DNA of 64,000 bases from the IMG/VR virus record IMGVR_UViG_3300046170_000378, positions 124,001-188,000 of that record, one strand, 5' to 3'. Within the stretch, counting starts at the first letter, position 1. Every line of letters begins with the position of its first letter. Position numbers and translations under genes: made by a program. The notes beneath the pieces are model-generated. The model saw nothing but the letters and a program-made list of their open reading frames with translations. It searched no databases and was not told the origin of the DNA. This document shows, piece after piece, positions 2,497-29,800 of the stretch.

Positions 2497-2524
2497 GAAA
2501 CTATCTCACTAAAGATCATAGAAT
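2497..2524 (+). promoter_or_regulatory. Putative middle promoter variant GAAAC-N17-TAGAAT
   Basis: Same spacing as the GAAAC-N17/18-TATAA family; upstream of dNTPase/polymerase. Confidence 0.45.
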
Positions 2525-2542
2525 TAATATACACAAAAAAAT

Positions 2543-3007
2543 ATGGCAAACATAGACAACAAATGCGCAGATCTTGATATTCAAGATTATCACAAAGATA
2601 CTAAAGATACTTTTGGTTTACTCTTTGACAAGCAAAAAGAATTGCAATCTAGATTGGGCTTTGACTTTGAAGGTTGGAGCATTAAAGAGATTGCAGATTT
2701 CTGGATGGTAAACAAACATGCAATGAGCGATGAGCTTAATGAAATGTTTGATGCACTAGGTGGAATTAATGACGGTATTGGAAACGCAGGTTGGAAATAC
2801 TGGAAGAAGGACAATGTTAAGACTCCTGAAATGAAAATCGAAGATCTTAGCGAAGAAGATAAGCTAGAATTATTTTATGAGTGGATTGATGGTCTTCATT
2901 TTTATATGAACTTTGCAATTTCTATTGGTATGACAAGTAAAGATATAGTTAACTTGTACATGGCAAAGAATGCTGAGAATCACGATAGACAAGAGCGAGG
3001 ATATTAA
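2543..3007 (+). CDS. Dimeric (all-alpha, MazG-like) dUTPase/dNTP pyrophosphatase, T4 gp56-like
   Basis: SDELNEMFDALG...WKYWK...ELFYEWIDGLHF...YMAKNAENHDRQ. Confidence 0.75.
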   Translation: MANIDNKCADLDIQDYHKDTKDTFGLLFDKQKELQSRLGFDFEGWSIKEIADFWMVNKHAMSDELNEMFDALGGINDGIGNAGWKYWKKDNVKTPEMKIEDLSEEDKLELFYEWIDGLHFYMNFAISIGMTSKDIVNLYMAKNAENHDRQERGY

Positions 3008-3025
3008 TCAAACAACACACATAAT

Positions 3026-4442
3026 ATGTTACTAGACATAGAGCAAAAAGAAAACGAAGTTATTATTAGTTACTACGATAAGGAAGGTAAAGTTTCCTTT
3101 AAAAGATATTCTGTAAATAAATTTGAAAATTGGGTAGTTACTGAAGAAAAGGATCGTTGGAAAGATGTTAAGTTTAGGAACTGGGATAATAGACCTATTA
3201 AAAGATCTATCTCTAGAAGTTTTAATAAATTTAGCCTGCTCTATTTCATGGATTCATTGCCTGAAAAAGATCAAGAAGAAATCTTTGAATTTAATATGCC
3301 ACGTACATACTTTGTGGATATTGAAACTGAAATTGTAGATGGATTCCCAAAAGCAGAAGAAGCAAAAACTAGAATTCTATCGTTTTCTATTATTACACCC
3401 TGAGCGCAAAGCAATTGTTTTAGGTTTAGAAGACATGAGTTCTGATCAGATCAAGAAAATTGAAGAAGATACCAATAAACACTTCAAAGATTATGATCAA
3501 GACTGGGAATTTAGTTATTACAAGTTTGACGACGAGTATAACATGGTTTATAGTTTCTTACATAAGTTTTTACCTAAGTTCCCAATGATGACTGGTTGGA
3601 ACTTCATTAACTATGACTGGCAGTATATAGTAAACAGATGTAAGAGATTACAAATCGACCTGACTGATGTGGCTATCACTGGATCACTAGATCGAAATGA
3701 TAGTAGACCATTGCACATGGGTATTCTAGATTACATGCAATTATATGATAAATATGATAGATCAGTTGCAGTAAAAGAATCTAATTCTTTAGATTTTGTA
3801 TCGAGCTCAGTATTAGATGTTGCAAAAATCAAATACACTGGTGGATTACAAGAACTTTATGAAGATAATTTTCAAAAGTACATTTACTATAACGTAGTCG
3901 ATTCTTGTCTGGTATATTACATAGATCAACAACTTAGATCCATGGAAGTACTATTGACATTGGCAACTATCACAAGAATGCCGCTTTATAAAGCAGCATC
4001 TCCAGTGGCAGTAACTGAAGCACTTATAGCTAGAAAGCTAATAGGTCAGAATAAAAAAATTGGAATGGAATGGAATAAAGAAGATGCTAAAAAAGATGGC
4101 AAATTCGAAGGAGCATTTGTTAAACAGCCTATTGTAGGCTATTACTCTGGAGTTTCTGCGTTTGACTTTGCATCTCTGTATCCATCAATCATGCGTCAAT
4201 TTAATATATCTCCGGATGCATTTATTGAACAAGTGAATGAAATGGAAATTCCAGAAAGAAGAAAAGACAAAGATGTCATTGTCTGCGAAAACGGTGTTGT
4301 ATATAAGAAAGAAGATAGTATTCTTAAAAAGATACTAGCAGATTTATATGGTCAAAGAAAGGACTATAAAAGAACTTCTTACGAGTATTATGAAAAAGCC
4401 CATGAACTAGAAAAAAAATTAAAGAAAAAAATTAAGGTCTAA
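3026..4442 (+). CDS. Family B DNA polymerase, N-terminal subunit (gp43A-like: 3'-5' exonuclease + motif A); one apparent +1 indel at ~3400
   Basis: ExoI VDIET, ExoII GWNFINYD, ExoIII YNVVDS, motif A FDFASLYPS; removing one C from acaccctgag joins the ORFs as IITPERKAIV. Confidence 0.9.
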
Positions 4443-4468
4443 TTTTTAGAAAAAAGAAATAGTAGCAT

Positions 4469-4476
4469 GATATATA
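4469..4476 (+). promoter_or_regulatory. Putative late promoter GATATATA
   Basis: Motif shared with structural-gene leaders; upstream of nrdB. Confidence 0.4.
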
Positions 4477-4593
4477 AAATCCTAGCAGCGCTGCTATTAT
4501 TCTTACATCTAAATAGATTAGACTGGGTCTTACATAAGGCCCATTGTAGTCTTAACTGGATTCTGTAAAAAAACTTAAAAAAATAATAGCAAT

Positions 4594-5604
4594 ATGTCAA
4601 ATCTCTTTAAAGAACGCTTAGAATACAAACCGTTCGAATATCCTGAATACTATAACGAAGGTTGGCTTAAACAGGCCCAAGCCTTTTGGTTACACACTGA
4701 AATCTCAATGCAAGGTGATGTAAAAGATTGGAATGAAAATCTTATGCCACATGAAAAAAACCTTGTAGGTAATATTCTTTTGGGTTTTGCTCAAACCGAA
4801 TGTGCAGTTTCAGACTATTGGACTAATATGGTAACGAGTTGGTTTCCTAAACATGAGATTAGACAAATGGCTATGATGTTTGGATCACAAGAAACAATAC
4901 ATGCAGTTGCATATTCATATCTTAATGAAACATTGGGCTTAGAGGATTTTGCAGCATTTTTACACGAACCTGCAATTGCCGAAAAGTTTGACCTATTAAC
5001 TTCAACTTCTGCAGATTACACACATGAAGATCTAGCAGTTAATGAAGATGCTAGAAAAGAAGTCGCTAGATCATTAGCTATTTTCTCAGCATTTGCTGAA
5101 GGTGTTTCACTCTACAGTTCTTTTGCGGTTTTATATAGTTTCCAAATGAGAAACTTACTTAAAGGAATTGGCCAACAAATGAAGTGGTCAGTAAGAGATG
5201 AGTCTTTGCACTCAAAGATGGGATGCCAGTTATTCAGACACATGTGTACAGAGTATCCAGAATTAAAGGATCAAGTAGAATCAGAAGTTTTAGAAGCTGC
5301 TAGATTAATGGTTGAAATGGAACACAAGTTTATTGATAAAATGTTTGAGCAAGGTGATCTTGCAAATATGGAAGCAGAAAATCTAAAACATTTTATTGTT
5401 AAAAGAGCTAATGAAAAGATTGCAGAGCTTGGATACACCGATGGTCCTTTTATGGAATTAGATGATGAAAAAGCAAGTAACTTAGATTGGTTTTATCACC
5501 TAACAGGTGGACATACGCACACCGACTTTTTTGCTATCAGACCTACTGACTACGCAAAAGCAGGAGAAGACGAGAATTGGGACGAGGATGACTTGTTCGA
5601 CTAA
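4594..5604 (+). CDS. nrdB: Ribonucleotide reductase class Ia beta subunit
   Basis: QETIHAVAY, FAEGVSL, VRDESLH di-iron motifs; C-terminal acidic tail. Confidence 0.95.
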   Translation: MSNLFKERLEYKPFEYPEYYNEGWLKQAQAFWLHTEISMQGDVKDWNENLMPHEKNLVGNILLGFAQTECAVSDYWTNMVTSWFPKHEIRQMAMMFGSQETIHAVAYSYLNETLGLEDFAAFLHEPAIAEKFDLLTSTSADYTHEDLAVNEDARKEVARSLAIFSAFAEGVSLYSSFAVLYSFQMRNLLKGIGQQMKWSVRDESLHSKMGCQLFRHMCTEYPELKDQVESEVLEAARLMVEMEHKFIDKMFEQGDLANMEAENLKHFIVKRANEKIAELGYTDGPFMELDDEKASNLDWFYHLTGGHTHTDFFAIRPTDYAKAGEDENWDEDDLFD

Positions 5605-5618
5605 TACAGATAATAAAA

Positions 5619-7456
5619 ATGAGTAAAGAAAATAAAGTAAACTATGGAGCTTCATTAGGTTGGGAGCTAGGTGTTGATTTCCCAACATGGGGAAACACAG
5701 AGATATACGTTAAGACAATAAGCAAAGGATATTGTTACCAAGATGAAACGCCAAAAGGATGCATATTGGAGAGTTGCAACTACAATTGCTAAAAGATTAG
5801 GTAAACCTGAACTTGCATCGAAATTTTTTGATTATATATGGAAAGGTTGGTTGAATCTAGCCTCACCGGTTCTTTCAAACACTGGGCTAGAAAGAGGACT
5901 TCCTATTTCATGTTTTGGTATTGATGTCGCTGATTCTATTCATGACATTGGAGCTAAAAACTTAGAAATGATGTTACTCGCTAAGCATGGTGGAGGTGTT
6001 GGACTAGGTATTAATCAAATTAGACCAGCGGGTGCAAAAATCACAGGTAATGGAACAAGCGACGGAGTCGTACCGTTCTGTAAAATATATGACTCTACAA
6101 TCCTTGCTACTAACCAAGGGTCTGTCAGACGTGGAGCTGCGTCAGTTAATATTGATATTGAACATGATGATTTCTGGGAATGGCTAGAAATTAGAGAACC
6201 TAAAGGTGATGTAAATAGACAATCTTTAAATCTACATCAATGTGCTGTTGTTCCAGATGGTTTTATGCAAAAAGTAGAAGCAGGTGATAAGGAATCTCGT
6301 AAAAGATGGGCTGCACTTTTAAGAAAGCGTAGATCTACAGGAGAACCATATATCATGTATAAAGGAAATGTAAATAGAGCTAATCCAGAAGCATATCACA
6401 AAAATGGATTAAAAGTTTATATGACCAATATTTGTTCTGAAATTACATTACACACAGATGAATCGCATTCATTTCGTATGTTGTTTATCATCTGTAAACC
6501 TTGGCAAAATACAACGAATGGAAAGATACTGATCTTATTTACACCGCGACTTGGTTTTTAGATGGTGTTATGGAAGAATTTATCCAAAAGGCTAAATTTA
6601 TGAGAGGTTTTGAAAACTCAATTAGATCAGCTGAAAAAGGAAGAGCATTAGGACTTGGTGTATTAGGATGGCATACATATCTACAAGAAAAAAATATTCC
6701 ATTTGATTCTCTATCTGCTCAATTTGAAACACGTAAAATATTTTCACAATTAAAGATAGAATCTGAAAGAGCATCTAGAGATTTAGCTACAGAATATGGT
6801 GAACCACTTTGGTGCGTAGGGACTGGAATGAGAAACACACACCTAAGAGCTATTGCTCCTACAGTAACTAATTCAAAACTTAGTGGAAATGTTTCACCTG
6901 GTATTGAGCCATGGGCAGCAAATCTATTAACAGAACAAACAGCTAAAGGGCACTTTCATCAGAAAAAACCCAACATTAGAAAAGGTTTTAGAAACTATCG
7001 GTAAAAATACTAAAACAACATGGGACAAGATATTAGAAGATGGTGGTTCGGTTTTAGGTTTACCATGGATTGAAGATTATTTTGTTTCCTTCGTTTTCAG
7101 ATAACGATGGAACTGCAGGTATTCAAAAACCATTGACTCAAAAACAATTGGAAAAATTACCAACGTTAGAGCAGGCCGATTATATTCCCATGAAAGATGT
7201 ATTTAGAACATTTAAGGAAATTAATCAATTAGATCTAGTAAGACAAGCGGGTATTAGACAACAATATGTTGATCAAGCTGCAAGTTTAAATCTAGCTTTC
7301 CCAAAAGAAGCTGAACCCAAATTCATAAATCAAGTACACTTAGAAGCATACAGAAAGGGCGTAAAAACACTTTACTATATGAGAACTGAAAGTGTACTTA
7401 GAGGAGATATTGCTGCATCTGCTACAGATCCCGACTGTGCAGCGTGTGACGGATAA
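5619..7456 (+). CDS. nrdA: Ribonucleotide reductase class Ia alpha subunit (several apparent sequencing indels)
   Basis: LASPVLSN, ISCF, TNICSEI, IAPTVTNS, KTLYYMRT, C-terminal CAACDG; N-terminus WELGVDFPTWGNTEIY as in Flavobacteriia NrdA. Confidence 0.92.
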
Positions 7457-7512
7457 AAATAAAAAGGTGAGGTTTGAAGACCTCGTCTTAGGACCGGGAT
7501 AGTTCTCGGAAA

Positions 7513-7550
7513 GAGGCCAGACGTATCGCTACTGTCTGGCCTCGCTTTTT
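7513..7550 (+). terminator. Rho-independent terminator after nrdA
   Basis: GAGGCCAGAC...GTCTGGCCTC stem followed by T run. Confidence 0.75.
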
Positions 7551-7602
7551 ATAAAGAATTATCATATTAACAATCAAATGTTAATTATTTTAGATAAAAA
7601 AT

Positions 7603-7629
7603 GAAACCTTTTTTGTTTACATGGTATAA
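7603..7629 (+). promoter_or_regulatory. Putative middle promoter GAAAC-N17-TATAA
   Basis: tGAAACcttttttgtttacatggTATAAt upstream of OMP gene. Confidence 0.6.
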
Positions 7630-7772
7630 TAGACCAATTAACAAAGAAAAATGAACACAACTTCATTATACTTATTAACAAAGACTGCTAAAAATAACAG
7701 CAGCACATCTATCTTTACTCCTAGAACTGTTATCACAGACTGATAGATTTATTTTAACCAAAACATTTTAAT

Positions 7773-8189
7773 ATGAAAAATTTTATTTTAACATTAGCCC
7801 TTGTGGCATTGACAACATTCGGTGCAAATGCACAGAATGCAAAAGGTGACTGGTACGTAGGTACTGGCGATATTACTAACACGGCTTGGACTGAATTATC
7901 AATCCAACCAACAATCGGTTATGCATTTGCAGATAACTACATGGTGGGAATGAGCCTTTCACAGGCAGATTCAACTGAAGACATGTCTTTAGGCCTAGAA
8001 GGAAGATATTTCCACAAAGGGTTTTTTGGATATGTAGGACTTAATGATTTTGATTTCGATCAACTTCAATTAGGCGTAGGTAAAATGTTCGCATTCCATA
8101 AAGGATCTATGTTTGTAGATCCAAAAATCGTTTACGATTTAGGAACTGAGACAACTAACCTTCAAATCGGCTTTGGTTTAAAGTTCTAA
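7773..8189 (+). CDS. Small outer-membrane beta-barrel protein with signal peptide
   Basis: MKNFILTLALVALTTFGANA signal; alternating hydrophobic beta-strands; C-terminal LQIGFGLKF beta-signal. Confidence 0.75.
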   Translation: MKNFILTLALVALTTFGANAQNAKGDWYVGTGDITNTAWTELSIQPTIGYAFADNYMVGMSLSQADSTEDMSLGLEGRYFHKGFFGYVGLNDFDFDQLQLGVGKMFAFHKGSMFVDPKIVYDLGTETTNLQIGFGLKF

Positions 8190-8214
8190 ACTAAAACTGA
8201 TTTGGTTAAATTAT

Positions 8215-8246
8215 AAGCCCGAGTTTCTAGGATCTCGGGCTTTTTT
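8215..8246 (+). terminator. Rho-independent terminator
   Basis: AAGCCCGAG...CTCGGGCTTTTTT. Confidence 0.8.
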
Positions 8247-8249
8247 ATT

Positions 8250-8277
8250 GAAACATTTTAATAAGACAAAGTATAAT
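8250..8277 (+). promoter_or_regulatory. Putative middle promoter GAAAC-N18-TATAA
   Basis: Upstream of clamp and polymerase C-subunit. Confidence 0.6.
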
Positions 8278-8306
8278 AATAAATCATTATCAAAAAACAA
8301 ATATTT

Positions 8307-9051
8307 ATGAAACTTAAATTAGATCGTATTGACCAGCATGCTTTGACAGCATTCATCAACAGAGTAAAACCGATTGATTCTTTCATTTACATGAAAATTG
8401 CAGATGGAACAATTAATTCAACAGTTTATCTTCCACAAAGAGATGCAGTAAAACATCACTCAGTAGAAGTAAGTACTATTTTTCAAGTAGAAGAATGGCC
8501 AGAAAACTGACAAAGAAATGAAAATTGCATTCTTTGAAGGTAACAAAGTAATCGAAGCTATTAAGCACTTTGATGCAGATGCAATTAAAGGTGAAATTGA
8601 ATTCATCGAAAACGACAATGAATTAGTAGCATCTTCGCTACGTATTTTCAATGATGAGCTAGAAATTACTTTAGCTTGTTCAGAGCCTTCACTTGGCTTT
8701 AAAGATCTTACACAAGATCAGATTGATGCAATCTTTGCAAGAGAAGATAGTAAATTTGACTTTAGCTTTGACACTCACATGATAGGTAAAGTTAAAAATC
8801 TATTTTCACTAGATAAAGATGAAACATTTAGCATTAAATCTGATGTATCAGGTGTAAGCGTAAGTGGTAAATCATTTAGCGTTGTAATCAATCCAGATAC
8901 AAGCGGAAATGGTGAAGTAACAGTTTATAAAAAGTACTTAAGCTTACTTGACAAAGACGAACAAACAGTATATGTTTCAGGATCAAAGGTTGTTTTTAAC
9001 TCCAATGACACAAATACATTACTAACTGTTTCAACTTGTCAAACAGCATAA
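8307..9051 (+). CDS. Probable DNA polymerase sliding clamp (gp45-like); one apparent indel at ~8505
   Basis: ~247 aa when joined (EWPETDKEMKIAF), alpha/beta pattern, directly upstream of the polymerase gene; weak sequence recognition. Confidence 0.55.
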
Positions 9052-9053
9052 GT

Positions 9054-10262
9054 ATGAACATCGAAGCGCTAGAAAATAAATCTATCGAGGAATTGACTGA
9101 TAATGAGGCGAAGCTGCTTGTAGATCACTACAAGCAGCTTTCAGCCAAATATACAGCATATGAACAAGCAGTTAAGTTAACACTAAACTCGATCTACGGA
9201 GCCTTCGGTAATAAGTGGTTCCACTTTTTTAATATTGACATTGCCGAGTCAATTACAAAACAAGGCAAAAATGCAATTCTCTACTCAGAAACAATTCTTA
9301 ATAAATATGTTAATGAGTTTTGGCACAAAGACACAGCAGTCCACGCACATTTCGGTATCAAAGTAAAGGGTAAAATTGAAAAACCTGCAGTAATTTATAT
9401 TGATACAGATTCATGTTACGTACAGTTTCAGGATTTGTATGAATCAATAATTTGGCCAGAAGAAACCGAGAAGATGGAAATTGATGTGTTTATTTTAGCA
9501 CTTTATGGATTTAGGCTTAAAGATTATATAGCTAAATGTATGGAGAAGTATGCAGAAAAAAGAAACACAGATAATTATTTAATATTCGAACTAGAGGCGC
9601 TCGCGTACAATGGTATTTGGATGTCCAAGAAAAAGTATATTCAAAACATAGCATGGGACGATAAGTTAGAAATTACAGATCGTCACAAATCATTGAAGAA
9701 AATTAAGACAATTGGATTTGATACGATTCAATCTTCAACGCCCAAATTTGTTAGAGAAAAACTAGTAGAAGCACTTAAAATTATCTTTAAAAGTAGAGTA
9801 ACTCCAACTGCAGAAGATCTACAAGCATTGGTTGTTTTTATGAAAGAAACCAAGAAACAATTCAAACTGGCAGATATTGATGAGATTTCATTTAATAGAA
9901 GAACCAACAATATCGATAAGTATATTGTAGATGATCAGACAGAATTTCAGATAGGACTAAAATGTCCAGCCAATGTTAAAGCCGCAGGATATTATAACTA
10001 TCTACTAAATAACAATAAAAAGTATAAAAACAAATATAAGGTTATTGGTAACGGTGAAAAGCTAAAGATTTATAACTGTAAATCACCAATATCAGAGGTT
10101 TATGCATATATGCCAAATGAACACCCTTATGAAATTGCTCCAGAAATTGATTACGACACTCAATTTGAAAAAGCAATGATTGATCCTCTTAATAGAGTAT
10201 TGACAGCAATTGGTCTACAAACACTAGACACTAATCTAATTTACGCATCGTCGTTATTTTAA
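9054..10262 (+). CDS. Family B DNA polymerase, C-terminal subunit (gp43B-like: motifs B and C, thumb)
   Basis: KLTLNSIYGAFGN (motif B), YIDTDS (motif C), KKKY. Confidence 0.92.
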   Translation: MNIEALENKSIEELTDNEAKLLVDHYKQLSAKYTAYEQAVKLTLNSIYGAFGNKWFHFFNIDIAESITKQGKNAILYSETILNKYVNEFWHKDTAVHAHFGIKVKGKIEKPAVIYIDTDSCYVQFQDLYESIIWPEETEKMEIDVFILALYGFRLKDYIAKCMEKYAEKRNTDNYLIFELEALAYNGIWMSKKKYIQNIAWDDKLEITDRHKSLKKIKTIGFDTIQSSTPKFVREKLVEALKIIFKSRVTPTAEDLQALVVFMKETKKQFKLADIDEISFNRRTNNIDKYIVDDQTEFQIGLKCPANVKAAGYYNYLLNNNKKYKNKYKVIGNGEKLKIYNCKSPISEVYAYMPNEHPYEIAPEIDYDTQFEKAMIDPLNRVLTAIGLQTLDTNLIYASSLF

Positions 10263-10272
10263 AAAAAACATT

Positions 10273-10428
10273 ATGACACCAACATTTTACGAAACTATTT
10301 TAAGTTTAACAAAGCAAACACCTAATGACATGGAACTAGGTAATGCAGTAAGAAGATTAATTTGGAAATTAGATGCAGCTGAAGCGTCAGATCCAAATCA
10401 ATTAAAAATTAATTTTCCAGAAGAATAA
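10273..10428 (+). CDS. Hypothetical protein (51 aa)
   Basis: Manually read ORF MTPTFYETILSLTKQTPNDMELGNAVRR... Confidence 0.55.
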   Translation: MTPTFYETILSLTKQTPNDMELGNAVRRLIWKLDAAEASDPNQLKINFPEE

Positions 10429-10429
10429 C

Positions 10430-10639
10430 ATGCACGTAGAATTAACAACTAGGCAAAAAGAATATGTTGAACAGTATCAATATATTTTAAATAGATTAAA
10501 CCAAATTCAAAAAGAATTAAGCTCTCTTGGTCAAGAATCAACAGACCTTATCAAAAATCTTCAAGAATTAAGAGAGGCTGAGTCTATTGAATTTCCAAAT
10601 GCAAACTTAATAGAAACATTAAAAGAAGCCGACGAGTAA
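10430..10639 (+). CDS. Hypothetical coiled-coil protein
   Basis: ORF track; heptad pattern. Confidence 0.6.
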   Translation: MHVELTTRQKEYVEQYQYILNRLNQIQKELSSLGQESTDLIKNLQELREAESIEFPNANLIETLKEADE

Positions 10640-10651
10640 GTCGGTTTTTTT
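10626..10651 (+). terminator. Rho-independent terminator
   Basis: AGCCGAC...GTCGGTTTTTTT. Confidence 0.7.
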
Positions 10652-10656
10652 ATTTA

Positions 10657-10683
10657 GAAACAAACGAAGTTATAGTGATATAA
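10657..10683 (+). promoter_or_regulatory. Putative middle promoter GAAAC-N17-TATAA
   Basis: Upstream of uvsX. Confidence 0.6.
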
Positions 10684-10706
10684 CCTTAAACAAAAAGTAT
10701 AATTAC

Positions 10707-11816
10707 ATGGCAAAGAAAGATTTTAGTTTTGACGATATAAACGCTGAGTTAAAACAATTGAATCCTATGGGATCAATTATGGCAGACTCAACTTTTAGTG
10801 AAGTTACAGAGTGGATTGACACTGGTAACTATCACTTGAATGCATGTGTTAGTGGTTCACTTTTCGGTGGATGGCCAAACAGTAGAACATGTTCAATCGC
10901 AGGACCCTCAGGAACTGGTAAAACATTCTTAGTATTGAACTCAGTAAAAAGAGCAATCGATATGGGATATAATGTGATCTATTATGATAGTGAAGCTGCG
11001 GTAGATAAAGATCAAATGGAAAAGTTTGGTATTGATGTTACTAAAGTAAATTATCAACCAATTAACACTGTTCAAGAATTTAGAACATCGGTTACTACAT
11101 TAACTAGTAAGATGCAAGAGATCAAAAGAGTTGGTGGTAAAACACCAAAGGTTATGATGATTCTAGATTCTGCAGGTAACTTAGCAACACAAAAAGAAAT
11201 TGAAGATGCAAAATCAGGATCTGAAAAAGCAGATATGACAAGATCTAAGGTGCTAAAATCTATTTTTAGAATCATTATGACACCTTTAGCAGATCTTAAG
11301 ATACCGTTTATTTTTACTAACCATACTTATCAGACTCAAGATTTTATCTCAAGACAAGTAGCTGGTGGTGGAACTGGACCAGAATATGCAGCATCTATTG
11401 TTCTATTCTTAGGAAAGGCGCAACTTAAAGAATCTAGTGGTGAAAAAGCAGGTATTATTGTAACTGCTAAGCCAAATAAGAATCGTTTTGCAAAACCACA
11501 TAATATTAAATTTCACCTACACTTTACAGAAGGTATGAACAGATATGTTGGGTTAGAACAATATATTGATTGGGAAGAAATTGGTATTACAAAGGGTGTT
11601 ATCGAAAAGGGTGAGAAGATCCCTAAGAAAACTGCAAGAAATTGGATCTGTAAGCACTTAGACGAAACTGTACCTAATAAAGATTTCTTCTCAGAGAAAG
11701 TATTTACACAAGAAGTATTAGAAAAGATTGAAGCTAGAATCAAACATGTCTTTAATTACAATACTGAAGAAAGAGAAATAGACTTAGACGAAATATTAGA
11801 AGAGGATGCAAATTAA
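10707..11816 (+). CDS. uvsX: RecA-like recombinase (UvsX)
   Basis: IDTGNYHLN, GPSGTGKT, YYDSEAA, ILDSAGNL, GGGTG. Confidence 0.92.
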   Translation: MAKKDFSFDDINAELKQLNPMGSIMADSTFSEVTEWIDTGNYHLNACVSGSLFGGWPNSRTCSIAGPSGTGKTFLVLNSVKRAIDMGYNVIYYDSEAAVDKDQMEKFGIDVTKVNYQPINTVQEFRTSVTTLTSKMQEIKRVGGKTPKVMMILDSAGNLATQKEIEDAKSGSEKADMTRSKVLKSIFRIIMTPLADLKIPFIFTNHTYQTQDFISRQVAGGGTGPEYAASIVLFLGKAQLKESSGEKAGIIVTAKPNKNRFAKPHNIKFHLHFTEGMNRYVGLEQYIDWEEIGITKGVIEKGEKIPKKTARNWICKHLDETVPNKDFFSEKVFTQEVLEKIEARIKHVFNYNTEEREIDLDEILEEDAN

Positions 11817-12105
11817 TCAGGATAATCTACCCATAAAATATGTTATGGGCATAGAAAAAGATTTACCTGAATATCCAACCGGCTTTGACATACTCTACAA
11901 AGAGATACAATTGTGTGTTAGAATGCCAGATAGACATAAAGGCAATTTTACTTTACATGCCCTAAAAACATATAGGTTTACAGAAACCGACGAATCTAAA
12001 TTATTAGAATCTATCGAAGATTTAGTTAATCTAGGTATTGTAGAACCAGTAAACACCGAGAAGGGCAAGCTTTCTTGGAAAATAATTCAAAACCCATTCG
12101 CATGA
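11806..12105 (+). CDS. Hypothetical protein (possible winged helix)
   Basis: ORF track; translationally coupled. Confidence 0.6.
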   Translation: MQINQDNLPIKYVMGIEKDLPEYPTGFDILYKEIQLCVRMPDRHKGNFTLHALKTYRFTETDESKLLESIEDLVNLGIVEPVNTEKGKLSWKIIQNPFA

Positions 12106-12683
12106 TAACAGTAATTGACGATTTTATAAAAGATAAAAATCTCTTAGAAGAGATACAATCAAACGCACAGGATATATTTAAAGATCCAGGCGTTTACAAG
12201 TGGTATGATGGTTGGTGGAATTCACCGGTAAATAATACTACTAAAAAAATTATAGAATATGCATGGGGGCAGAATTGTCCAATTTCAACATCATATGATA
12301 TTTCTGGATTTGAATATTGGACTGGCATTCAACAGTCAAATCAAAACGGTCAAGATTTTGATGACTATTTAGAAATGCATTTCGATAAAGACGAAGCTTG
12401 GTTTGAAAAAACAGGAGAATTTAAAACCCCAATAATGGGATCTATTTATTATCCACACCAAGACGAGTTTGAAGGTGGAATGTTAGAAATATATTCTAAT
12501 GGAGATGAAAATCCACCAGAAGTACTTTATGCTAAACCAAATAGGCTGATTATATTCGAAGCTGGTAAACATCCACACCAGGTCACAGTAGTTACAAAAG
12601 GAACTAGATACGCAGTGGCCATAAATTTATGGGACGAGGAGCCTTATAGTAAACAAATTGGTAAATTTACCATAGAAGGATAA
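12102..12683 (+). CDS. 2OG-Fe(II) oxygenase (prolyl-hydroxylase-like)
   Basis: HFD...EGGML...HPHQV...GTRY: HxD..H..R jelly-roll motif; ATG at 12102 overlaps the upstream stop. Confidence 0.85.
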   Translation: MITVIDDFIKDKNLLEEIQSNAQDIFKDPGVYKWYDGWWNSPVNNTTKKIIEYAWGQNCPISTSYDISGFEYWTGIQQSNQNGQDFDDYLEMHFDKDEAWFEKTGEFKTPIMGSIYYPHQDEFEGGMLEIYSNGDENPPEVLYAKPNRLIIFEAGKHPHQVTVVTKGTRYAVAINLWDEEPYSKQIGKFTIEG

Positions 12684-12693
12684 ACAACATTAT

Positions 12694-14010
12694 ATGCAAT
12701 TCGGTCAAGATTTTGAAAAAATATTTTTTAGGTTATCATTAATCAAGCCTAAATATCTACAGAGTATTAAGAAAAGTTTTTATACTTCTGAAGAAATAGA
12801 TCTGTTAAGTTATTTAGCTAATAAGTTTTATGATAAATTTCATGAAACACCAAGTAAAGAGCAGTTATGGTTATTGGTTAATAGACATGAAAGGGCAAAG
12901 GAAAAGATTAATGAAGATTTATTAGACCTAGTATTTAAAACAGATCTTGATCAATATGACGAAGAATGGTTAACTACTACAGCTGAATCTTGGATTAAAT
13001 GGCGCACCTTTGACACCACACTAATAGATACTATAGAATTTATTAAGACTACTAAGGTAACACCTGAGAACGCAGACACTGTTATCCAAAAGGTTAAAGG
13101 TCTTATTAATGAAAGAAACAATCTTAGTTTTAATTCTGATCTTGGTTTAGACTTCTTTGATGTAGAATCACACGATCAAAAAGAATCAGAAAAAGTAAGT
13201 TCAGGATATAATTTTATTGACAGGCTTTTAGGAGGTGGATATGACAAGGGAGGTAACTTAATTGTATATGCTGGAGAACAGAATATTGGTAAGTCAATAT
13301 ATCTAGCAAATGATGCAGCAAACTTTGTAAAAATGGGAACTAACACTGTGGTTATTACCGCAGAAATGGCAGCTCATAAATTTGTAAAGAGAATTGGATC
13401 AAATCTTCTTAGCGTAAACATTAATGAATACGCAGAAAAGGCAAAGAATAAAGATCACATTAAGAGAAGGCTAGAAACGGTCGGCGATGGTTTTACACCA
13501 CCCGGTCAACTGTTTATTAAGCAAATGCCAACGTCACAGGCAACAGTATTAGATATTGAAGCGTATGTTAGTCAAATTGAAGAAGAGCGTCAGATTAAGA
13601 TCGGTGCAGTTGTGGTAGATTACATAAATATCTTAGCAAACTACAGAAATTTAAACACGGAAAATACTTATATGAAGATCAAGCAAATTGCAGAAGATCT
13701 TAGAGCTATGGGTATTAGAAATGATTGGTTGATAGTCACAGCGACTCAGATAAATAGAAATGGCTACAATTCTTCAGACATTTCAATGACAGACGTTGCA
13801 GAATCTGCAGGTCTTTCTCACACAGCAGACATCATGTTAGGTATTATACAAGATGATCTTATGCGAGCTAATGACGAATATTGGCTTAAGATTTTAAAAA
13901 TTAGGGACGGCGAGGGCAAAGGAACTAAGTGTAAATTGAATATTAATTGGAATTACATGAGGCTAATTGAAACCGACGACATTACAAATTCAAACTTACA
14001 CGGAATATAA
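12694..14010 (+). CDS. Replicative DnaB-like helicase (gp41)
   Basis: GEQNIGKS Walker A, ITAEM, VVDYINI, TATQINR, AESAGL. Confidence 0.92.
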   Translation: MQFGQDFEKIFFRLSLIKPKYLQSIKKSFYTSEEIDLLSYLANKFYDKFHETPSKEQLWLLVNRHERAKEKINEDLLDLVFKTDLDQYDEEWLTTTAESWIKWRTFDTTLIDTIEFIKTTKVTPENADTVIQKVKGLINERNNLSFNSDLGLDFFDVESHDQKESEKVSSGYNFIDRLLGGGYDKGGNLIVYAGEQNIGKSIYLANDAANFVKMGTNTVVITAEMAAHKFVKRIGSNLLSVNINEYAEKAKNKDHIKRRLETVGDGFTPPGQLFIKQMPTSQATVLDIEAYVSQIEEERQIKIGAVVVDYINILANYRNLNTENTYMKIKQIAEDLRAMGIRNDWLIVTATQINRNGYNSSDISMTDVAESAGLSHTADIMLGIIQDDLMRANDEYWLKILKIRDGEGKGTKCKLNINWNYMRLIETDDITNSNLHGI

Positions 14011-29738: not shown

Positions 29739-29755
29739 ATATTATATTTATCTTT

Positions 29756-29783
29756 GAAACTTTAACGCCTTGTGTGTGTATAA
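29756..29783 (+). promoter_or_regulatory. Putative middle promoter GAAAC-N18-TATAA
   Basis: Upstream of clamp loader. Confidence 0.6.
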
Positions 29784-29800
29784 TTACCAAAACATATTAT

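What the first reader, a model, noticed from the sequence alone, without database searches (positions are those of the whole stretch)
3026..10262. DNA polymerase B split into two genes ~4.6 kb apart, with RNR, an OMP and the clamp between the halves
Seen: 3026-4442 holds ExoI-III and motif A and ends in a basic helix (RKDYKRTSYEYYEKAHELEKKLKKK). 9054-10262 begins with an acidic helix (EALENKSIEELTDNEAKLL) leading into motifs B and C. The break falls in the fingers hairpin, and no intein motifs are visible. Established: split gp43A/gp43B polymerases are known in some Aeromonas/Acinetobacter T4 relatives. Inference: a heterodimer held by a charge-complementary fingers coiled coil, with each half behind its own middle-type promoter. 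The wide separation by essential genes argues for an old, stable split rather than an assembly error.
Basis: partly seen in the sequence, partly recalled or inferred. Interest (0 to 1): 0.68.

Follow-up and report, generated by a model that had tools for sequence, protein, structure and literature searches.

The report
Two-gene phage DNA polymerase, fingertip split
A marine large phage encodes its T4-type replicative DNA polymerase as two separate genes, cut at the tip of the fingers domain and kept about 4.6 kb apart; the split is real and old, but it is the same kind of split already known from some Aeromonas and Acinetobacter phages.

Summary
The split is real. The N-half (3026-4442) carries Exo I-III and motif A. 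The C-half (9054-10262) carries motifs B, C, KKxY and the thumb. Between them lie nrdB, nrdA, a small OMP-like gene and a sliding-clamp gene.

It is not an assembly error. About 60 of 80 independent viral contigs (66-99% identical C-half) hold both halves and keep the same gene order. Contigs from three seawater runs bridge both junctions.

The break maps to the fingertip, at the same position as gp43A/gp43B of Aeromonas phage 44RR2.8t. Tenacibaculum phage PTm1, Prevotella Lak-A2 and huge phages LR756500 and LR756504 share it. In Lak and huge-phage records the halves lie 10-280 kb apart.

Both halves are under strong purifying selection (dN/dS 0.02-0.09). A complex model supports binding (0.79 against 0.00 for the best control). 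The interface is mostly palm, with the fingers helices adding to it.

- 3026-4442 is not one open frame in this record. One extra base at 3398 breaks it. Five more break nrdA and one breaks the clamp. All seven are absent from relatives and from other runs, so they are record errors.
- Neither half has room for a promoter of its own. The C-half starts 2 nt after the clamp stop.

Verdict: a new lineage-wide member of a known kind, of moderate interest.

The parts
2543..3007 (+). MazG-like NTP pyrophosphohydrolase gene directly upstream of the N-half (18-nt gap); probably the same transcription unit
   Evidence: phrog_173 E 3e-22; kept upstream of the N-half in most relatives that reach far enough upstream
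3026..4442 (+). PolB N-half (gp43A-like, 471 aa once the record's extra base at 3398 is discounted): N-terminal domain, Exo I-III, motif A (DFASLYPS), first fingers helix (QRKDYK), basic tail
   Evidence: single 471-aa ORF in L003 3980-5395
3398..3398 (+). One extra C (CC to CCC) that breaks the N-half frame in this record only
   Evidence: absent in L003, L004, L006, L012 and, among the runs that cover the place, in contigs of X2, X3 and X15 (X1 has no depth there)
4483..4496 (+). Short GC palindrome followed by a T-rich stretch in the 151-nt spacer after the N-half; a possible weak terminator. This spacer is also where relatives carry different downstream cassettes
   Evidence: sequence; X2 contig joins 4429 to 7773 and an X3 contig diverges at 4429
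4594..5604 (+). nrdB, ribonucleotide reductase small subunit
   Evidence: PF00268 E 1e-56
5619..7456 (+). nrdA, ribonucleotide reductase large subunit (610 aa in L003); broken into five frames here by extra bases at 5757, 6472, 6503, 6948 and 7090
7513..7550 (+). Strong hairpin (GAGGCCAGAC...GTCTGGCCTC) plus T-run after nrdA: terminator-like
   Evidence: sequence
7773..8189 (+). 138-aa protein with a signal peptide and 8 predicted beta-strands, ending ...GFGLKF: a candidate small outer-membrane beta-barrel; present in only some relatives
   Evidence: PF13505 E 0.004; AF2 pLDDT 73.7; Foldseek best E 3e-3 to porins, designed TM barrels and OprF-N; Atlas shows only viral hypothetical clusters
8216..8277 (+). 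Hairpin plus T-run (8216-8246), then TGAAAC-N17-TATAAT (8249-8277): terminator-like and promoter-like pair before the clamp/C-half operon
   Evidence: the TGAAAC...TA(T/C)AAT arrangement recurs upstream of the clamp in the relatives
8307..9051 (+). Sliding clamp (gp45-like, 247 aa in L003); frame broken here by an extra base at 8502
   Evidence: AF2 pLDDT 78.9, pTM 0.76; Foldseek PDB top hits beta-clamp and PCNA, E 5e-10, prob 1.0, TMq 0.6-0.68; no Pfam or PHROG hit
9054..10262 (+). PolB C-half (gp43B-like, 402 aa from ATG 9054): acidic second fingers helix, motif B (KLTLNSIYG), motif C (YIDTDS), KKKY, thumb, hydrophobic C-terminal tail ...LIYASSLF
10629..10652 (+). Hairpin plus T-run after two small ORFs (10273-10428, 10430-10639): terminator-like end of the clamp/C-half unit
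   Evidence: sequence
10707..11816 (+). uvsX recombinase. The order C-half, uvsX, DnaB-like helicase (12694-14010) matches gp43, uvsX, gp41 of cyanophage S-PM2
   Evidence: phrog_97 E 3e-62; phrog_19 E 2e-60; S-PM2 annotation

Best explanation
This is the replicative family-B DNA polymerase of a marine large phage (212-kb record, about 76% complete, host unknown). It is encoded permanently as two polypeptides cut at the tip of the fingers helical hairpin. The N-half supplies the N-terminal and exonuclease domains, the motif A part of the palm and the first fingers helix. The C-half supplies the second fingers helix with motif B, the motif C part of the palm, the thumb and the clamp-binding tail. 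After translation the two chains assemble into one enzyme with a composite active site (inferred). Assembly is driven mainly by completion of the palm sheet, with the two antiparallel fingers helices and their oppositely charged ends adding to it (modelled). The halves sit in different transcription units. The N-half follows a MazG-like gene. The C-half is the second gene of a clamp/C-half operon and is probably translationally coupled to the clamp (inferred from spacing). The split is ancestral to a lineage that also holds Tenacibaculum phage PTm1, Lak megaphages and several huge phages. It arose independently of the identical-position split in Aeromonas T4-like phages. The space behind the N-half then became a place where gene cassettes (RNR of two kinds, an OMP-like gene) come and go. 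The seven frame breaks in this stretch of the window are errors of this sequence record, not biology.
For: Identity and break position: Pfam and PHROGs. Alignment to RB69 and T4 gp43 ends at RB69 487 / T4 498 for the N-half, with 22 and 8 residues left over. It starts at RB69 554 / T4 538 for the C-half, with about 33 and 21 residues before. The break therefore falls near RB69 510-520. Real and stable: 80 contigs hold a free-standing full-length C-half. About 60 of them also hold an N-half ORF of about 465-475 aa ending at the same place, 3654-5772 nt upstream (the other contigs end too soon upstream), with the same gene order. Logan contigs of three seawater runs bridge 4442 and 9054. Function kept: dN/dS is 0.02-0.09 with equal dN in both halves. 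Motif A, QRKxYK, motifs B and C and KKKY are in 46 of 46 distinct relatives. Only one N and one C piece are in the 212-kb record. Assembly: complex prediction ipSAE 0.79 (runs 0.78-0.80) against a best control of 0.00, about 385 contacts, at least 96% contact agreement, partner pLDDT at least 84. This mark was reached by 51 of 78 solved complexes and 2 of 108 mismatched pairs. Precedent: phage 25 gp43A/B co-purify and are active (PMC2988022); Pfu split at the fingertip is fully active (PMC3061061). Same site elsewhere: 44RR 43B M1 aligns to our C-half M1, and 43A ends within 3 residues of our N-half end. PTm1, Lak-A2, LR756500 and LR756504 share the site. Independent origin: 44RR groups with unsplit VR20 at 99/98 support, and all sampled split large phages fall on the other side at 100/99. 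Operon: the clamp-stop to C-half-ATG distance is -1 to +4 nt in 49 of 50 distinct relatives. Record errors.
Against: No biochemical evidence exists for this phage. The complex model may score high from memory of single-chain PolB structures, so it shows likeness rather than binding. Transcription units are inferred from hairpins, a conserved promoter-like motif and spacing; the sigma-70-type scan found no excess over shuffles (37 against 43). The tree has only 15 rows and several long branches (PTm1, Lak-A2), so 'one ancient split' is parsimony, not proof. The source sample of this record was not identified, so the seven extra bases could in principle be a real defective variant.
Confidence: 0.85

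Rival explanations
1. Assembly artefact: the two halves belong to one gene, or to two genomes, wrongly joined around an RNR/clamp block.
For: The record is of poor quality: about 20 one-base insertions in 64 kb.
Against: The same order and the same ORF ends occur in about 60 independent contigs from many metagenomes. Both junctions are bridged by contigs from three other runs. The same split is present in the cultured phage PTm1 and in the complete Lak-A2 genome.
Confidence: 0.01
2. The halves are rejoined before use: by a split intein, by RNA splicing or trans-splicing, or by DNA excision of the 4.6-kb block during infection.
For: Inteins do sit in the C-halves of PTm1, Lak-A2 and LR756500. 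Introns and homing endonucleases commonly split polymerase genes in Bacteroides jumbo phages (PMC12880540).
Against: 471 + 402 = 873 aa covers RB69's 903 aa with no spare length for intein halves. There is no intein Pfam hit. The C-half starts MNIE, not Cys/Ser/Thr after an intein block. The intervening DNA is four conserved, selected genes with their own terminators, not an intron. No contig joins about 4440 to about 9054 in the three DNA runs or the RNA run. No Rfam or group I intron scan was run.
Confidence: 0.03
3. The halves work apart. The N-half is a free-standing proofreading exonuclease and the C-half is a remnant or serves another partner, so no heterodimeric polymerase forms.
For: The halves are in separate transcription units. 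They lie up to 280 kb apart and on opposite strands in relatives. Exonuclease and polymerase are separate genes in some phages (RM378, cited in PMC3061061).
Against: Catalytic motif A lies in the N-half and motif C in the C-half, and both are invariant in 46 of 46 relatives, so neither half alone has a complete active site. The two halves have equal dN and strong purifying selection. The complex prediction passes with about 385 contacts. The record has exactly one N and one C piece, although it is only about 76% complete.
Confidence: 0.05
4. The copy in this window is a decaying, non-functional phage genome. The frame breaks in polN, nrdA and the clamp are real mutations.
For: All seven breaks hit essential replication genes within 5 kb, and more lie further along the window.
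Against: All breaks are one-base extensions of a short run of the same base, and nearly all go in the same direction. That is an error signature, not a mutation spectrum. Near-identical contigs in every laid run that covers each place lack every one of them. About 20 frameshifts in essential genes without any other decay (98.6% identity to the intact L003) is implausible for a replicating phage.
Confidence: 0.05

Closest known systems
gp43A/gp43B of Aeromonas phages 44RR2.8t, 25, 31, 65 and Acinetobacter phage 133 (Petrov et al. 2006, 2010, as cited in PMC3061061 and PMC2988022)
   Same: T4-type PolB cut at the fingertip. Our C-half M1 aligns to 44RR 43B M1, and the N-half ends within 3 residues of the 43A end. 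Sizes are similar: 498+391 aa there, 471+402 aa here. There is no intein. The N end is basic and the C start acidic.
   Different: There the cistrons are 2 bp to 3 kb apart, separated by an untranslated spacer or a homing-endonuclease gene, and the state is limited to a few phages nested among unsplit Straboviridae. Here 3.7-5.8 kb of conserved cellular-type genes (RNR, clamp) lie between the halves, the halves are in different transcription units, and the state is fixed across a whole lineage.
Tenacibaculum phage PTm1 (AP019524) ORF-236 / ORF-239 / ORF-241
   Same: It is a cultured large phage of a marine flavobacterium with the same fingertip break: our N-half residue 468 aligns to residue 490 of 497. 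The C part lies about 2 kb downstream on the same strand.
   Different: Only 27-28% identical. Two hypothetical genes lie between the halves rather than RNR and the clamp. Its C-half is further interrupted at motif C by an intein with a VSR endonuclease gene; GenBank calls it 'intein-containing split DNA polymerase precursor'.
Prevotella Lak megaphages and huge phages LR756500, LR756502, LR756504, LR745206
   Same: These are the closest polymerase relatives in the phage collection (33-47% identity). In Lak-A2, LR756500 and LR756504 the N-half ORF ends about 25-35 aa after QRKxYK; the ORF ends of LR756502 and LR745206 were not inspected.
   Different: The halves are 10 kb (LR756500) to about 100-280 kb apart and often on opposite strands. 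Those records carry no annotation, and I found no paper describing this split.
Methanothermobacter thermautotrophicus split PolB (Kelman et al. 1999, as cited in PMC3061061)
   Same: A natural two-gene family-B polymerase with distant genes (85 kb apart).
   Different: It is archaeal, and the break lies in the palm, about 83 residues C-terminal to the fingertip site.
PhiKZ DNAP-N (gp82) / DNAP-C (gp50) (bioRxiv 10.64898/2026.09.30.755723)
   Same: A jumbo-phage family-B polymerase made of two separately encoded subunits that form a stable 1:1 complex, with motif A in N and motif C in C.
   Different: The break is inside a large palm insertion, so fingers and thumb are all in the C subunit. It uses a clamp-derived monomeric subunit (Rhc) instead of a ring clamp.
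Engineered fingertip-split Pfu polymerase (PMC3061061)
   Same: The cut is at the fingertip, and the fragments reassemble into a fully active enzyme. The C fragment needs the N fragment to fold.
   Different: It is artificial, archaeal and bicistronic with coupled translation.

Membership tests
Fingertip-split T4-type family-B DNA polymerase (gp43A/gp43B type) | Two separate ORFs, each with its own start and stop, that together cover one gp43 | tested here: met
   471-aa and 402-aa ORFs in L003 and about 60 other contigs. Together they align to RB69/T4 gp43 from the exonuclease domain on, about residues 185-890; the N-terminal ~160 aa are covered only by PHROG profiles. In the window itself the N ORF is broken by a record error at 3398.
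Fingertip-split T4-type family-B DNA polymerase (gp43A/gp43B type) | The break lies between the first fingers helix (R482/K486 of RB69) and the motif B helix | tested here: met
   The N-half ends 22 aa after the residue aligned to RB69 487. The C-half's motif B lysine is at residue 40-41. The ends coincide with 44RR 43A/43B.
Fingertip-split T4-type family-B DNA polymerase (gp43A/gp43B type) | Exo I-III and motif A are in the N subunit; motifs B, C, KKxY and the thumb are in the C subunit; all are conserved | tested here: met
   46 of 46 distinct relatives for motifs A, B, C, KKKY and QRKxYK. Exo I and II patterns matched in 46 of 46 (loose patterns); Exo III matched my strict pattern in 26 of 46.
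Fingertip-split T4-type family-B DNA polymerase (gp43A/gp43B type) | The subunits associate and the complex has polymerase activity | not testable with these tools
   Only a model: ipSAE 0.79 against a best control of 0.00. Activity has been shown for phage 25 and split Pfu, not for this phage.
Fingertip-split T4-type family-B DNA polymerase (gp43A/gp43B type) | Common descent with the Aeromonas/Acinetobacter split | tested here: not met
   44RR 43A groups with unsplit VR20 (99/98), away from the window clade, PTm1 and Lak (100/99). Same kind, separate origin. The tree is small and has long branches.
Split-intein (trans-spliced) polymerase | Intein N and C fragments flank the break, with a nucleophile at +1 of the C extein | tested here: not met
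   No intein Pfam hit and no spare length. The C-half starts MNIEAL.
Sliding clamp (gp45/PCNA/beta-clamp fold), for the 8307-9051 gene | Two tandem clamp domains of about 120 aa with the clamp fold | tested here: met
   AF2 model pLDDT 78.9. Foldseek PDB hits to beta-clamp and PCNA at E 5e-10, prob 1.0, TMq up to 0.68. Ring formation and polymerase binding were not tested. No sequence-family hit.
Small outer-membrane beta-barrel (OmpA/OmpX-like), for the 7773-8189 gene | Signal peptide, 8 antiparallel amphipathic strands and a C-terminal aromatic residue | tested here: inconclusive
   A signal-peptide-like N-terminus, about 8 strands and a terminal F are present. But Pfam gives E 0.004, below the cut-off, and the best Foldseek E is 3e-3.

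The most novel reading that the evidence does not exclude
The fingertip split is the fixed, ancestral state of the replicative polymerase in a whole lineage of large phages: this marine clade, Tenacibaculum PTm1, Prevotella Lak megaphages and several 460-640-kb phages. It arose independently of the Aeromonas/Acinetobacter split at the same residue-level position. In this lineage the split is exploited rather than merely tolerated. The C-half has become a translationally coupled operon partner of the sliding clamp, while the N-half is expressed elsewhere. This would allow ordered assembly, separate dosage of the two subunits, or free movement of the halves around the genome.
Probability: 0.3. 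Interest if true: 0.55.

Novelty: new member of a known kind. Interest (0 to 1): 0.38.

Why it matters
It shows that a replicative family-B polymerase can stay permanently in two chains cut at the fingertip across a large and ecologically important group of phages, including Lak megaphages, and not only in a few Aeromonas or Acinetobacter isolates. The same cut site has been reached at least twice in nature and once in the laboratory (Pfu), which marks it as the permissive seam of the fold. Practically, annotation pipelines and PolB marker-gene phylogenies of large phages will mis-handle these genomes unless both halves are found and joined. The window record also needs a warning about its one-base insertions.

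Tried and rejected
- Megablast of 2500-10700 against the phage collection found nothing; protein-level searches were needed.
- The sigma-70-type promoter scan showed no excess over shuffles (37 against 43 +/- 6.7). The exact motif TGAAAC-N15-20-TAWAAT occurs 3 times in the window against 0.68 expected, and 7 of 100 shuffles reach 3. That is weak on its own; only its recurrence before the clamp gene in relatives gives it weight.
- I tested whether PTm1 ORF-237 or ORF-238, which lie between its halves, is the clamp. hhalign against the clamp alignment gave probability 4% and 0.1%, so no support.
- Pfam and PHROGs found nothing for the clamp. Only the fold identified it.
- For the OMP-like protein, the Atlas shows only viral hypothetical clusters and Foldseek gives nothing below E 1e-3.
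- I considered programmed +1 frameshifting at CCC-TGA (3398). I rejected it because the extra base is absent from relatives and other runs, and the other six sites have no common shifty context.
- MAFFT --addfragments of both halves onto unsplit S-PM2 and VR20 mis-stacked the two fingers helices and was discarded. Break coordinates rest on the HMMER alignments.
- I listed the ORFs of the Lak-A2 and huge-phage loci under tables 11 and 15, because Lak phages are reported as alternatively coded (PMC8346664 abstract). The ends of the polymerase halves were the same under both. No alternative code was used for the window.
- The first complex-prediction run found the machine busy and one script call returned no answer; both were repeated unchanged.

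Full report
**What is in the window.** The window is bases 124001-188000 of a 212,342-base IMG/VR virus record, linear and about 76% complete. G+C is about 33%.

On the + strand, ORF listing and family scans give this gene order:
- a MazG-like NTP pyrophosphohydrolase (2543-3007)
- the N-terminal half of a T4-type family-B DNA polymerase (3026-4442)
- nrdB (4594-5604)
- nrdA (5619-7456)
- a 138-aa signal-peptide protein (7773-8189)
- a 247-aa protein (8307-9051)
- the C-terminal half of the polymerase (ATG 9054 to 10262)
- two small ORFs
- uvsX (10707-11816)
- a 2OG-Fe(II) oxygenase
- a DnaB-like helicase (12694-14010)

The N piece matches Pfam DNA_pol_B_exo1 and DNA_pol_B profile positions 23-137. 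The C piece matches DNA_pol_B positions 152-237. PHROGs already has separate families for such halves. The N piece covers phrog_2062 almost end to end (E 4e-67). The C piece covers phrog_1918 positions 7-371 of 382 (E 9e-70). The whole record holds exactly these two PolB pieces.

**Correction to the observation: the record carries one-base insertions.** The stretch 3026-4442 is not one open frame here. It reads as 3026-3403 plus 3339-4442 in a different frame. nrdA is spread over five frames and the 247-aa gene over two.

Alignment with contig L003 (98.6% identical over 13.5 kb) shows exactly seven one-base insertions in the window, at 3398, 5757, 6472, 6503, 6948, 7090 and 8502. Each one lengthens a short run of the same base.
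- In L003 the genes are intact: polN 471 aa, nrdA 610 aa, the clamp-like gene 247 aa.
- In every other relative each gene lies in one frame.
- Logan contigs of three seawater DNA runs (X1-X3), nearly identical to the window, leave out one letter at each of the seven places in every run that covers the place.
- Against an 87%-identical relative, 12 of 74 large ORFs hit the window in more than one frame. Nearly all of these shifts are +1, and they are scattered to at least 43.5 kb.

So the record has about 20 single-base insertion errors. I considered a programmed +1 frameshift at CCC-TGA (3398) and rejected it for these reasons.

**The split is real, conserved and selected.** A scan of viral contigs found 219 loci that encode a relative of the C-half. 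The best 80 (66-99% identity) all match residues 1-402 end to end, so the C-half is a free-standing gene in each.
- Wherever enough upstream DNA is held, the order polN, nrdB, nrdA, (OMP-like gene), clamp, polC, uvsX is kept, usually with the MazG-like gene upstream.
- In about 60 of these contigs an N-half ORF of about 465-475 aa ends at the same place, 3654-5772 nt upstream of the C-half; the other contigs end too soon upstream.
- N-halves end ...QRKxYKKTSYxYYEKAHELEKK(L/F)K.. and C-halves of 397-402 aa start M(N/D)I(E/K)ELENK....
- Contigs from X1, X2 and X3 bridge both the N-half/nrdB junction and the clamp/C-half junction.
- dN/dS is 0.02-0.09 for both halves, and their dN values track each other: 0.018/0.018, 0.13/0.09, 0.18/0.16 and 0.23/0.24.
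- Motif A (DFASLYPS) and QRKxYK in the N-half, and motif B (KxxxNSxYG), motif C (YIDTDS) and KKKY in the C-half, are present in 46 of 46 distinct relatives.

**Where the break lies.** HMMER alignment to solved gp43 structures carries the N-half to RB69 residue 487 (T4 residue 498), with 22 (8) residues left over. It picks up the C-half at RB69 554 (T4 538), with about 33 (21) residues before. The break therefore falls near RB69 510-520, at the tip of the fingers hairpin, with roughly ten residues fewer than in the single-chain enzymes.

The two halves together have 873 residues against 903 in RB69. No intein domain is detected, so nothing is left over for a split intein.

**Same site in known and unannotated phages.**
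- In Aeromonas phage 44RR2.8t, the annotated genes 43 (498 aa) and 43B (391 aa, 'split gene') lie 49 nt apart. Our C-half M1 aligns with 43B M1, and our N-half ends within three residues of the 43A end.
- The closest polymerase relatives in the phage collection are huge phages LR756500, LR756502, LR756504 and LR745206 and the Prevotella Lak phages (33-47% identity).
- In those records the two halves map 10 kb (LR756500), about 100-135 kb (LR745206, LR756502), about 220 kb (Lak-A2) and about 280 kb (LR756504) apart, often on opposite strands.
- In the three I inspected (Lak-A2, LR756500, LR756504) the N-half ORF stops at the homologous place.
- The cultured Tenacibaculum phage PTm1 has the same break: our residue 468 aligns to residue 490 of 497. 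Its C part lies 2 kb downstream and is further interrupted by an intein with a VSR endonuclease gene.

A maximum-likelihood tree of N-halves puts 44RR 43A with the unsplit E. coli phage VR20 (99/98) and cyanophage S-PM2. PTm1, Lak-A2, LR756500, LR756504 and the window clade, all split, fall on the other side (100/99). The simplest reading is two independent origins of the same cut, one of them old and lineage-wide. The tree is small and has long branches, so this is an inference.

**How the halves probably work together.** The complex test on the intact L003 halves supports binding.
- The score is 0.79 in three runs (0.78-0.80), against a best control of 0.00.
- There are about 385 contacts, with at least 96% agreement between runs and a partner pLDDT of at least 84.
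- This mark was reached by 51 of 78 solved complexes and by 2 of 108 mismatched pairs.
- Because single-chain PolB structures are known, the pass may reflect memory of that fold. It shows likeness, not binding.

The lowest-error contacts pair N residues 370-394 (the motif A strand region) with C residues 122-123 and 175-189 (the motif C hairpin and neighbouring strands) and with C 66-70. The fingers helices (N 433-469 with C 11-50) form a second part of the interface.

The last 25 residues of N have net charge +4.2 (range +2 to +8). The first 25 residues of C have -4.2 (range -6 to -2), across 41 distinct end pairs. The values are +3/-7 in 44RR, +1/-5 in Lak-A2, and reversed (-3/+2) in LR756504.

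So electrostatic pairing of the fingertip helices is plausible, but the model says the enzyme is held mainly by the palm.

Published work gives precedent. Phage 25 gp43A and gp43B co-purify and are active (PMC2988022). Pfu cut at the fingertip is fully active, and its C fragment needs the N fragment to fold (PMC3061061).

**Expression.**
- Only 18 nt precede the N-half and 2 nt precede the C-half.
- The clamp stop and the C-half ATG are -1 to +4 nt apart in 49 of 50 distinct relatives. The C-half is therefore the second cistron of a clamp operon and is probably translationally coupled to it.
- That unit is framed by a hairpin plus T-run (8216-8246), a TGAAAC-N17-TATAAT element (8249-8277) and another hairpin plus T-run (10629-10652).
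- The TGAAAC...TA(T/C)AAT arrangement recurs before the clamp gene across the relatives. In the window the exact pattern is only weakly above chance: 3 copies against 0.68 expected.
- A marine metatranscriptome run (X15) has contigs over the clamp and the start of the C-half, and very deep ones over the OMP-like gene. DNA carry-over cannot be excluded.

**The genes between the halves.** The 247-aa protein has no sequence-family hit. It folds with pLDDT 78.9 into two clamp-like domains, and Foldseek matches beta-clamps and PCNA at E 5e-10 with probability 1.0.

The 138-aa protein has a signal peptide, about eight strands and a terminal Phe. Support is otherwise weak: Pfam E 0.004 and Foldseek E 3e-3. 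'OMP' is a reasonable lead, not a finding.

The block between the halves varies among relatives.
- Six relatives carry a different RNR, only 27-43% identical, in the same place.
- Many relatives lack the OMP-like gene.
- One X2 contig joins 4429 directly to 7773, skipping the RNR genes.

The order polC, uvsX, helicase, with MazG nearby, mirrors gp43, uvsX, gp41, MazG of cyanophage S-PM2. This suggests the cassette block sits inside what was once a single gene 43.

**Comparison with what is known, and verdict.** Natural fingertip splits of gp43 are established for Aeromonas phages 44RR, 25, 31 and 65 and Acinetobacter phage 133, with the cistrons 2 bp to 3 kb apart (Petrov 2006, 2010). [quoted passage not shown]

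PTm1's GenBank record already calls one piece a split polymerase precursor.

In the searched library I found no description of the lineage-wide fingertip split in Lak, huge and marine large phages, nor of the clamp/C-half coupling. The moraphage paper lists two separate 'DNA-directed DNA polymerase' orthogroups as core genes, which may reflect the same split.

I file this as a new member of a known kind. It is of moderate interest as a lineage marker, as a case of convergence on one permissive seam, and as an annotation warning.

Noticed in passing
window 3398, 5757, 6472, 6503, 6948, 7090, 8502; further frame changes near 20.9, 28.2-28.5, 29.93, 30.42, 30.56, 36.58, 39.5, 39.97, 41.55, 43.25, 43.46 and 43.52 kb: The record carries about 20 one-base insertions, nearly all +1 and each extending a short run of one base. 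They break about a dozen large genes. The first seven are absent from 99%-identical contigs and from every laid run that covers the place. Any 'frameshift' or 'pseudogene' finding on this window should be read as record error first.
   Followed up: partly
window 4443-7772; loci L018, L027, L028, L055, L056, L072; X2 contig joining 4429 to 7773: The block behind the N-half is a variable cassette site. Six relatives carry a different class of nrdA/nrdB (27-43% identity) at the same place, many lack the OMP-like gene, and one seawater contig skips the RNR genes altogether.
   Followed up: partly
window 7560-8260 (OMP-like gene 7773-8189): In a marine metatranscriptome run (X15), contigs 92-95% identical to this small signal-peptide beta-barrel gene have word depth 108-511, far above the rest of the stretch. 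It may be a highly expressed phage gene, but DNA carry-over and relatives cannot be excluded.
   Followed up: no
L087 (Lak-A2 344059-349114), L085 (LR756500), L091 8696-11502 (PTm1): The C-halves of PTm1, Lak-A2 and LR756500 are further interrupted near motif C by an intein (end block ...VYDIEVDD(N/T)HTF...). In PTm1 a separate VSR endonuclease gene lies between the pieces. The window's C-half has no such insert.
   Followed up: partly
window 7602-7630, 8249-8277, 29755-29784; upstream of the clamp in L003-L080: A TGAAAC-N17-19-TATAAT element directly after a hairpin plus T-run recurs before the clamp gene in the relatives and occurs three times in the window. It is a candidate clade-specific promoter. 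Its sigma-70-like form is not the TTTG/TAnnTTTG type usual for Bacteroidota hosts, so the host remains open.
   Followed up: partly
window 2543-3007 and 9054-14010; L092 (S-PM2): The gene order C-half, uvsX, DnaB-like helicase, with a MazG-like gene next to the N-half, mirrors gp43, uvsX, gp41, MazG of cyanophage S-PM2. This fits insertion of the RNR/clamp block into an originally single gene 43.
   Followed up: no
PMC12619734 (moraphages), core-gene table: The recently described aquatic 'moraphages' (200-307 kb, predicted Bacteroidota hosts, reported there as sharing a more recent ancestor with Lak phages than with T4 phages) list two different 'DNA-directed DNA polymerase' orthogroups (VOG00275, VOG00710) as core genes. 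These may be the two halves of the same split polymerase. The window's phage may belong to or near this group.
   Followed up: no
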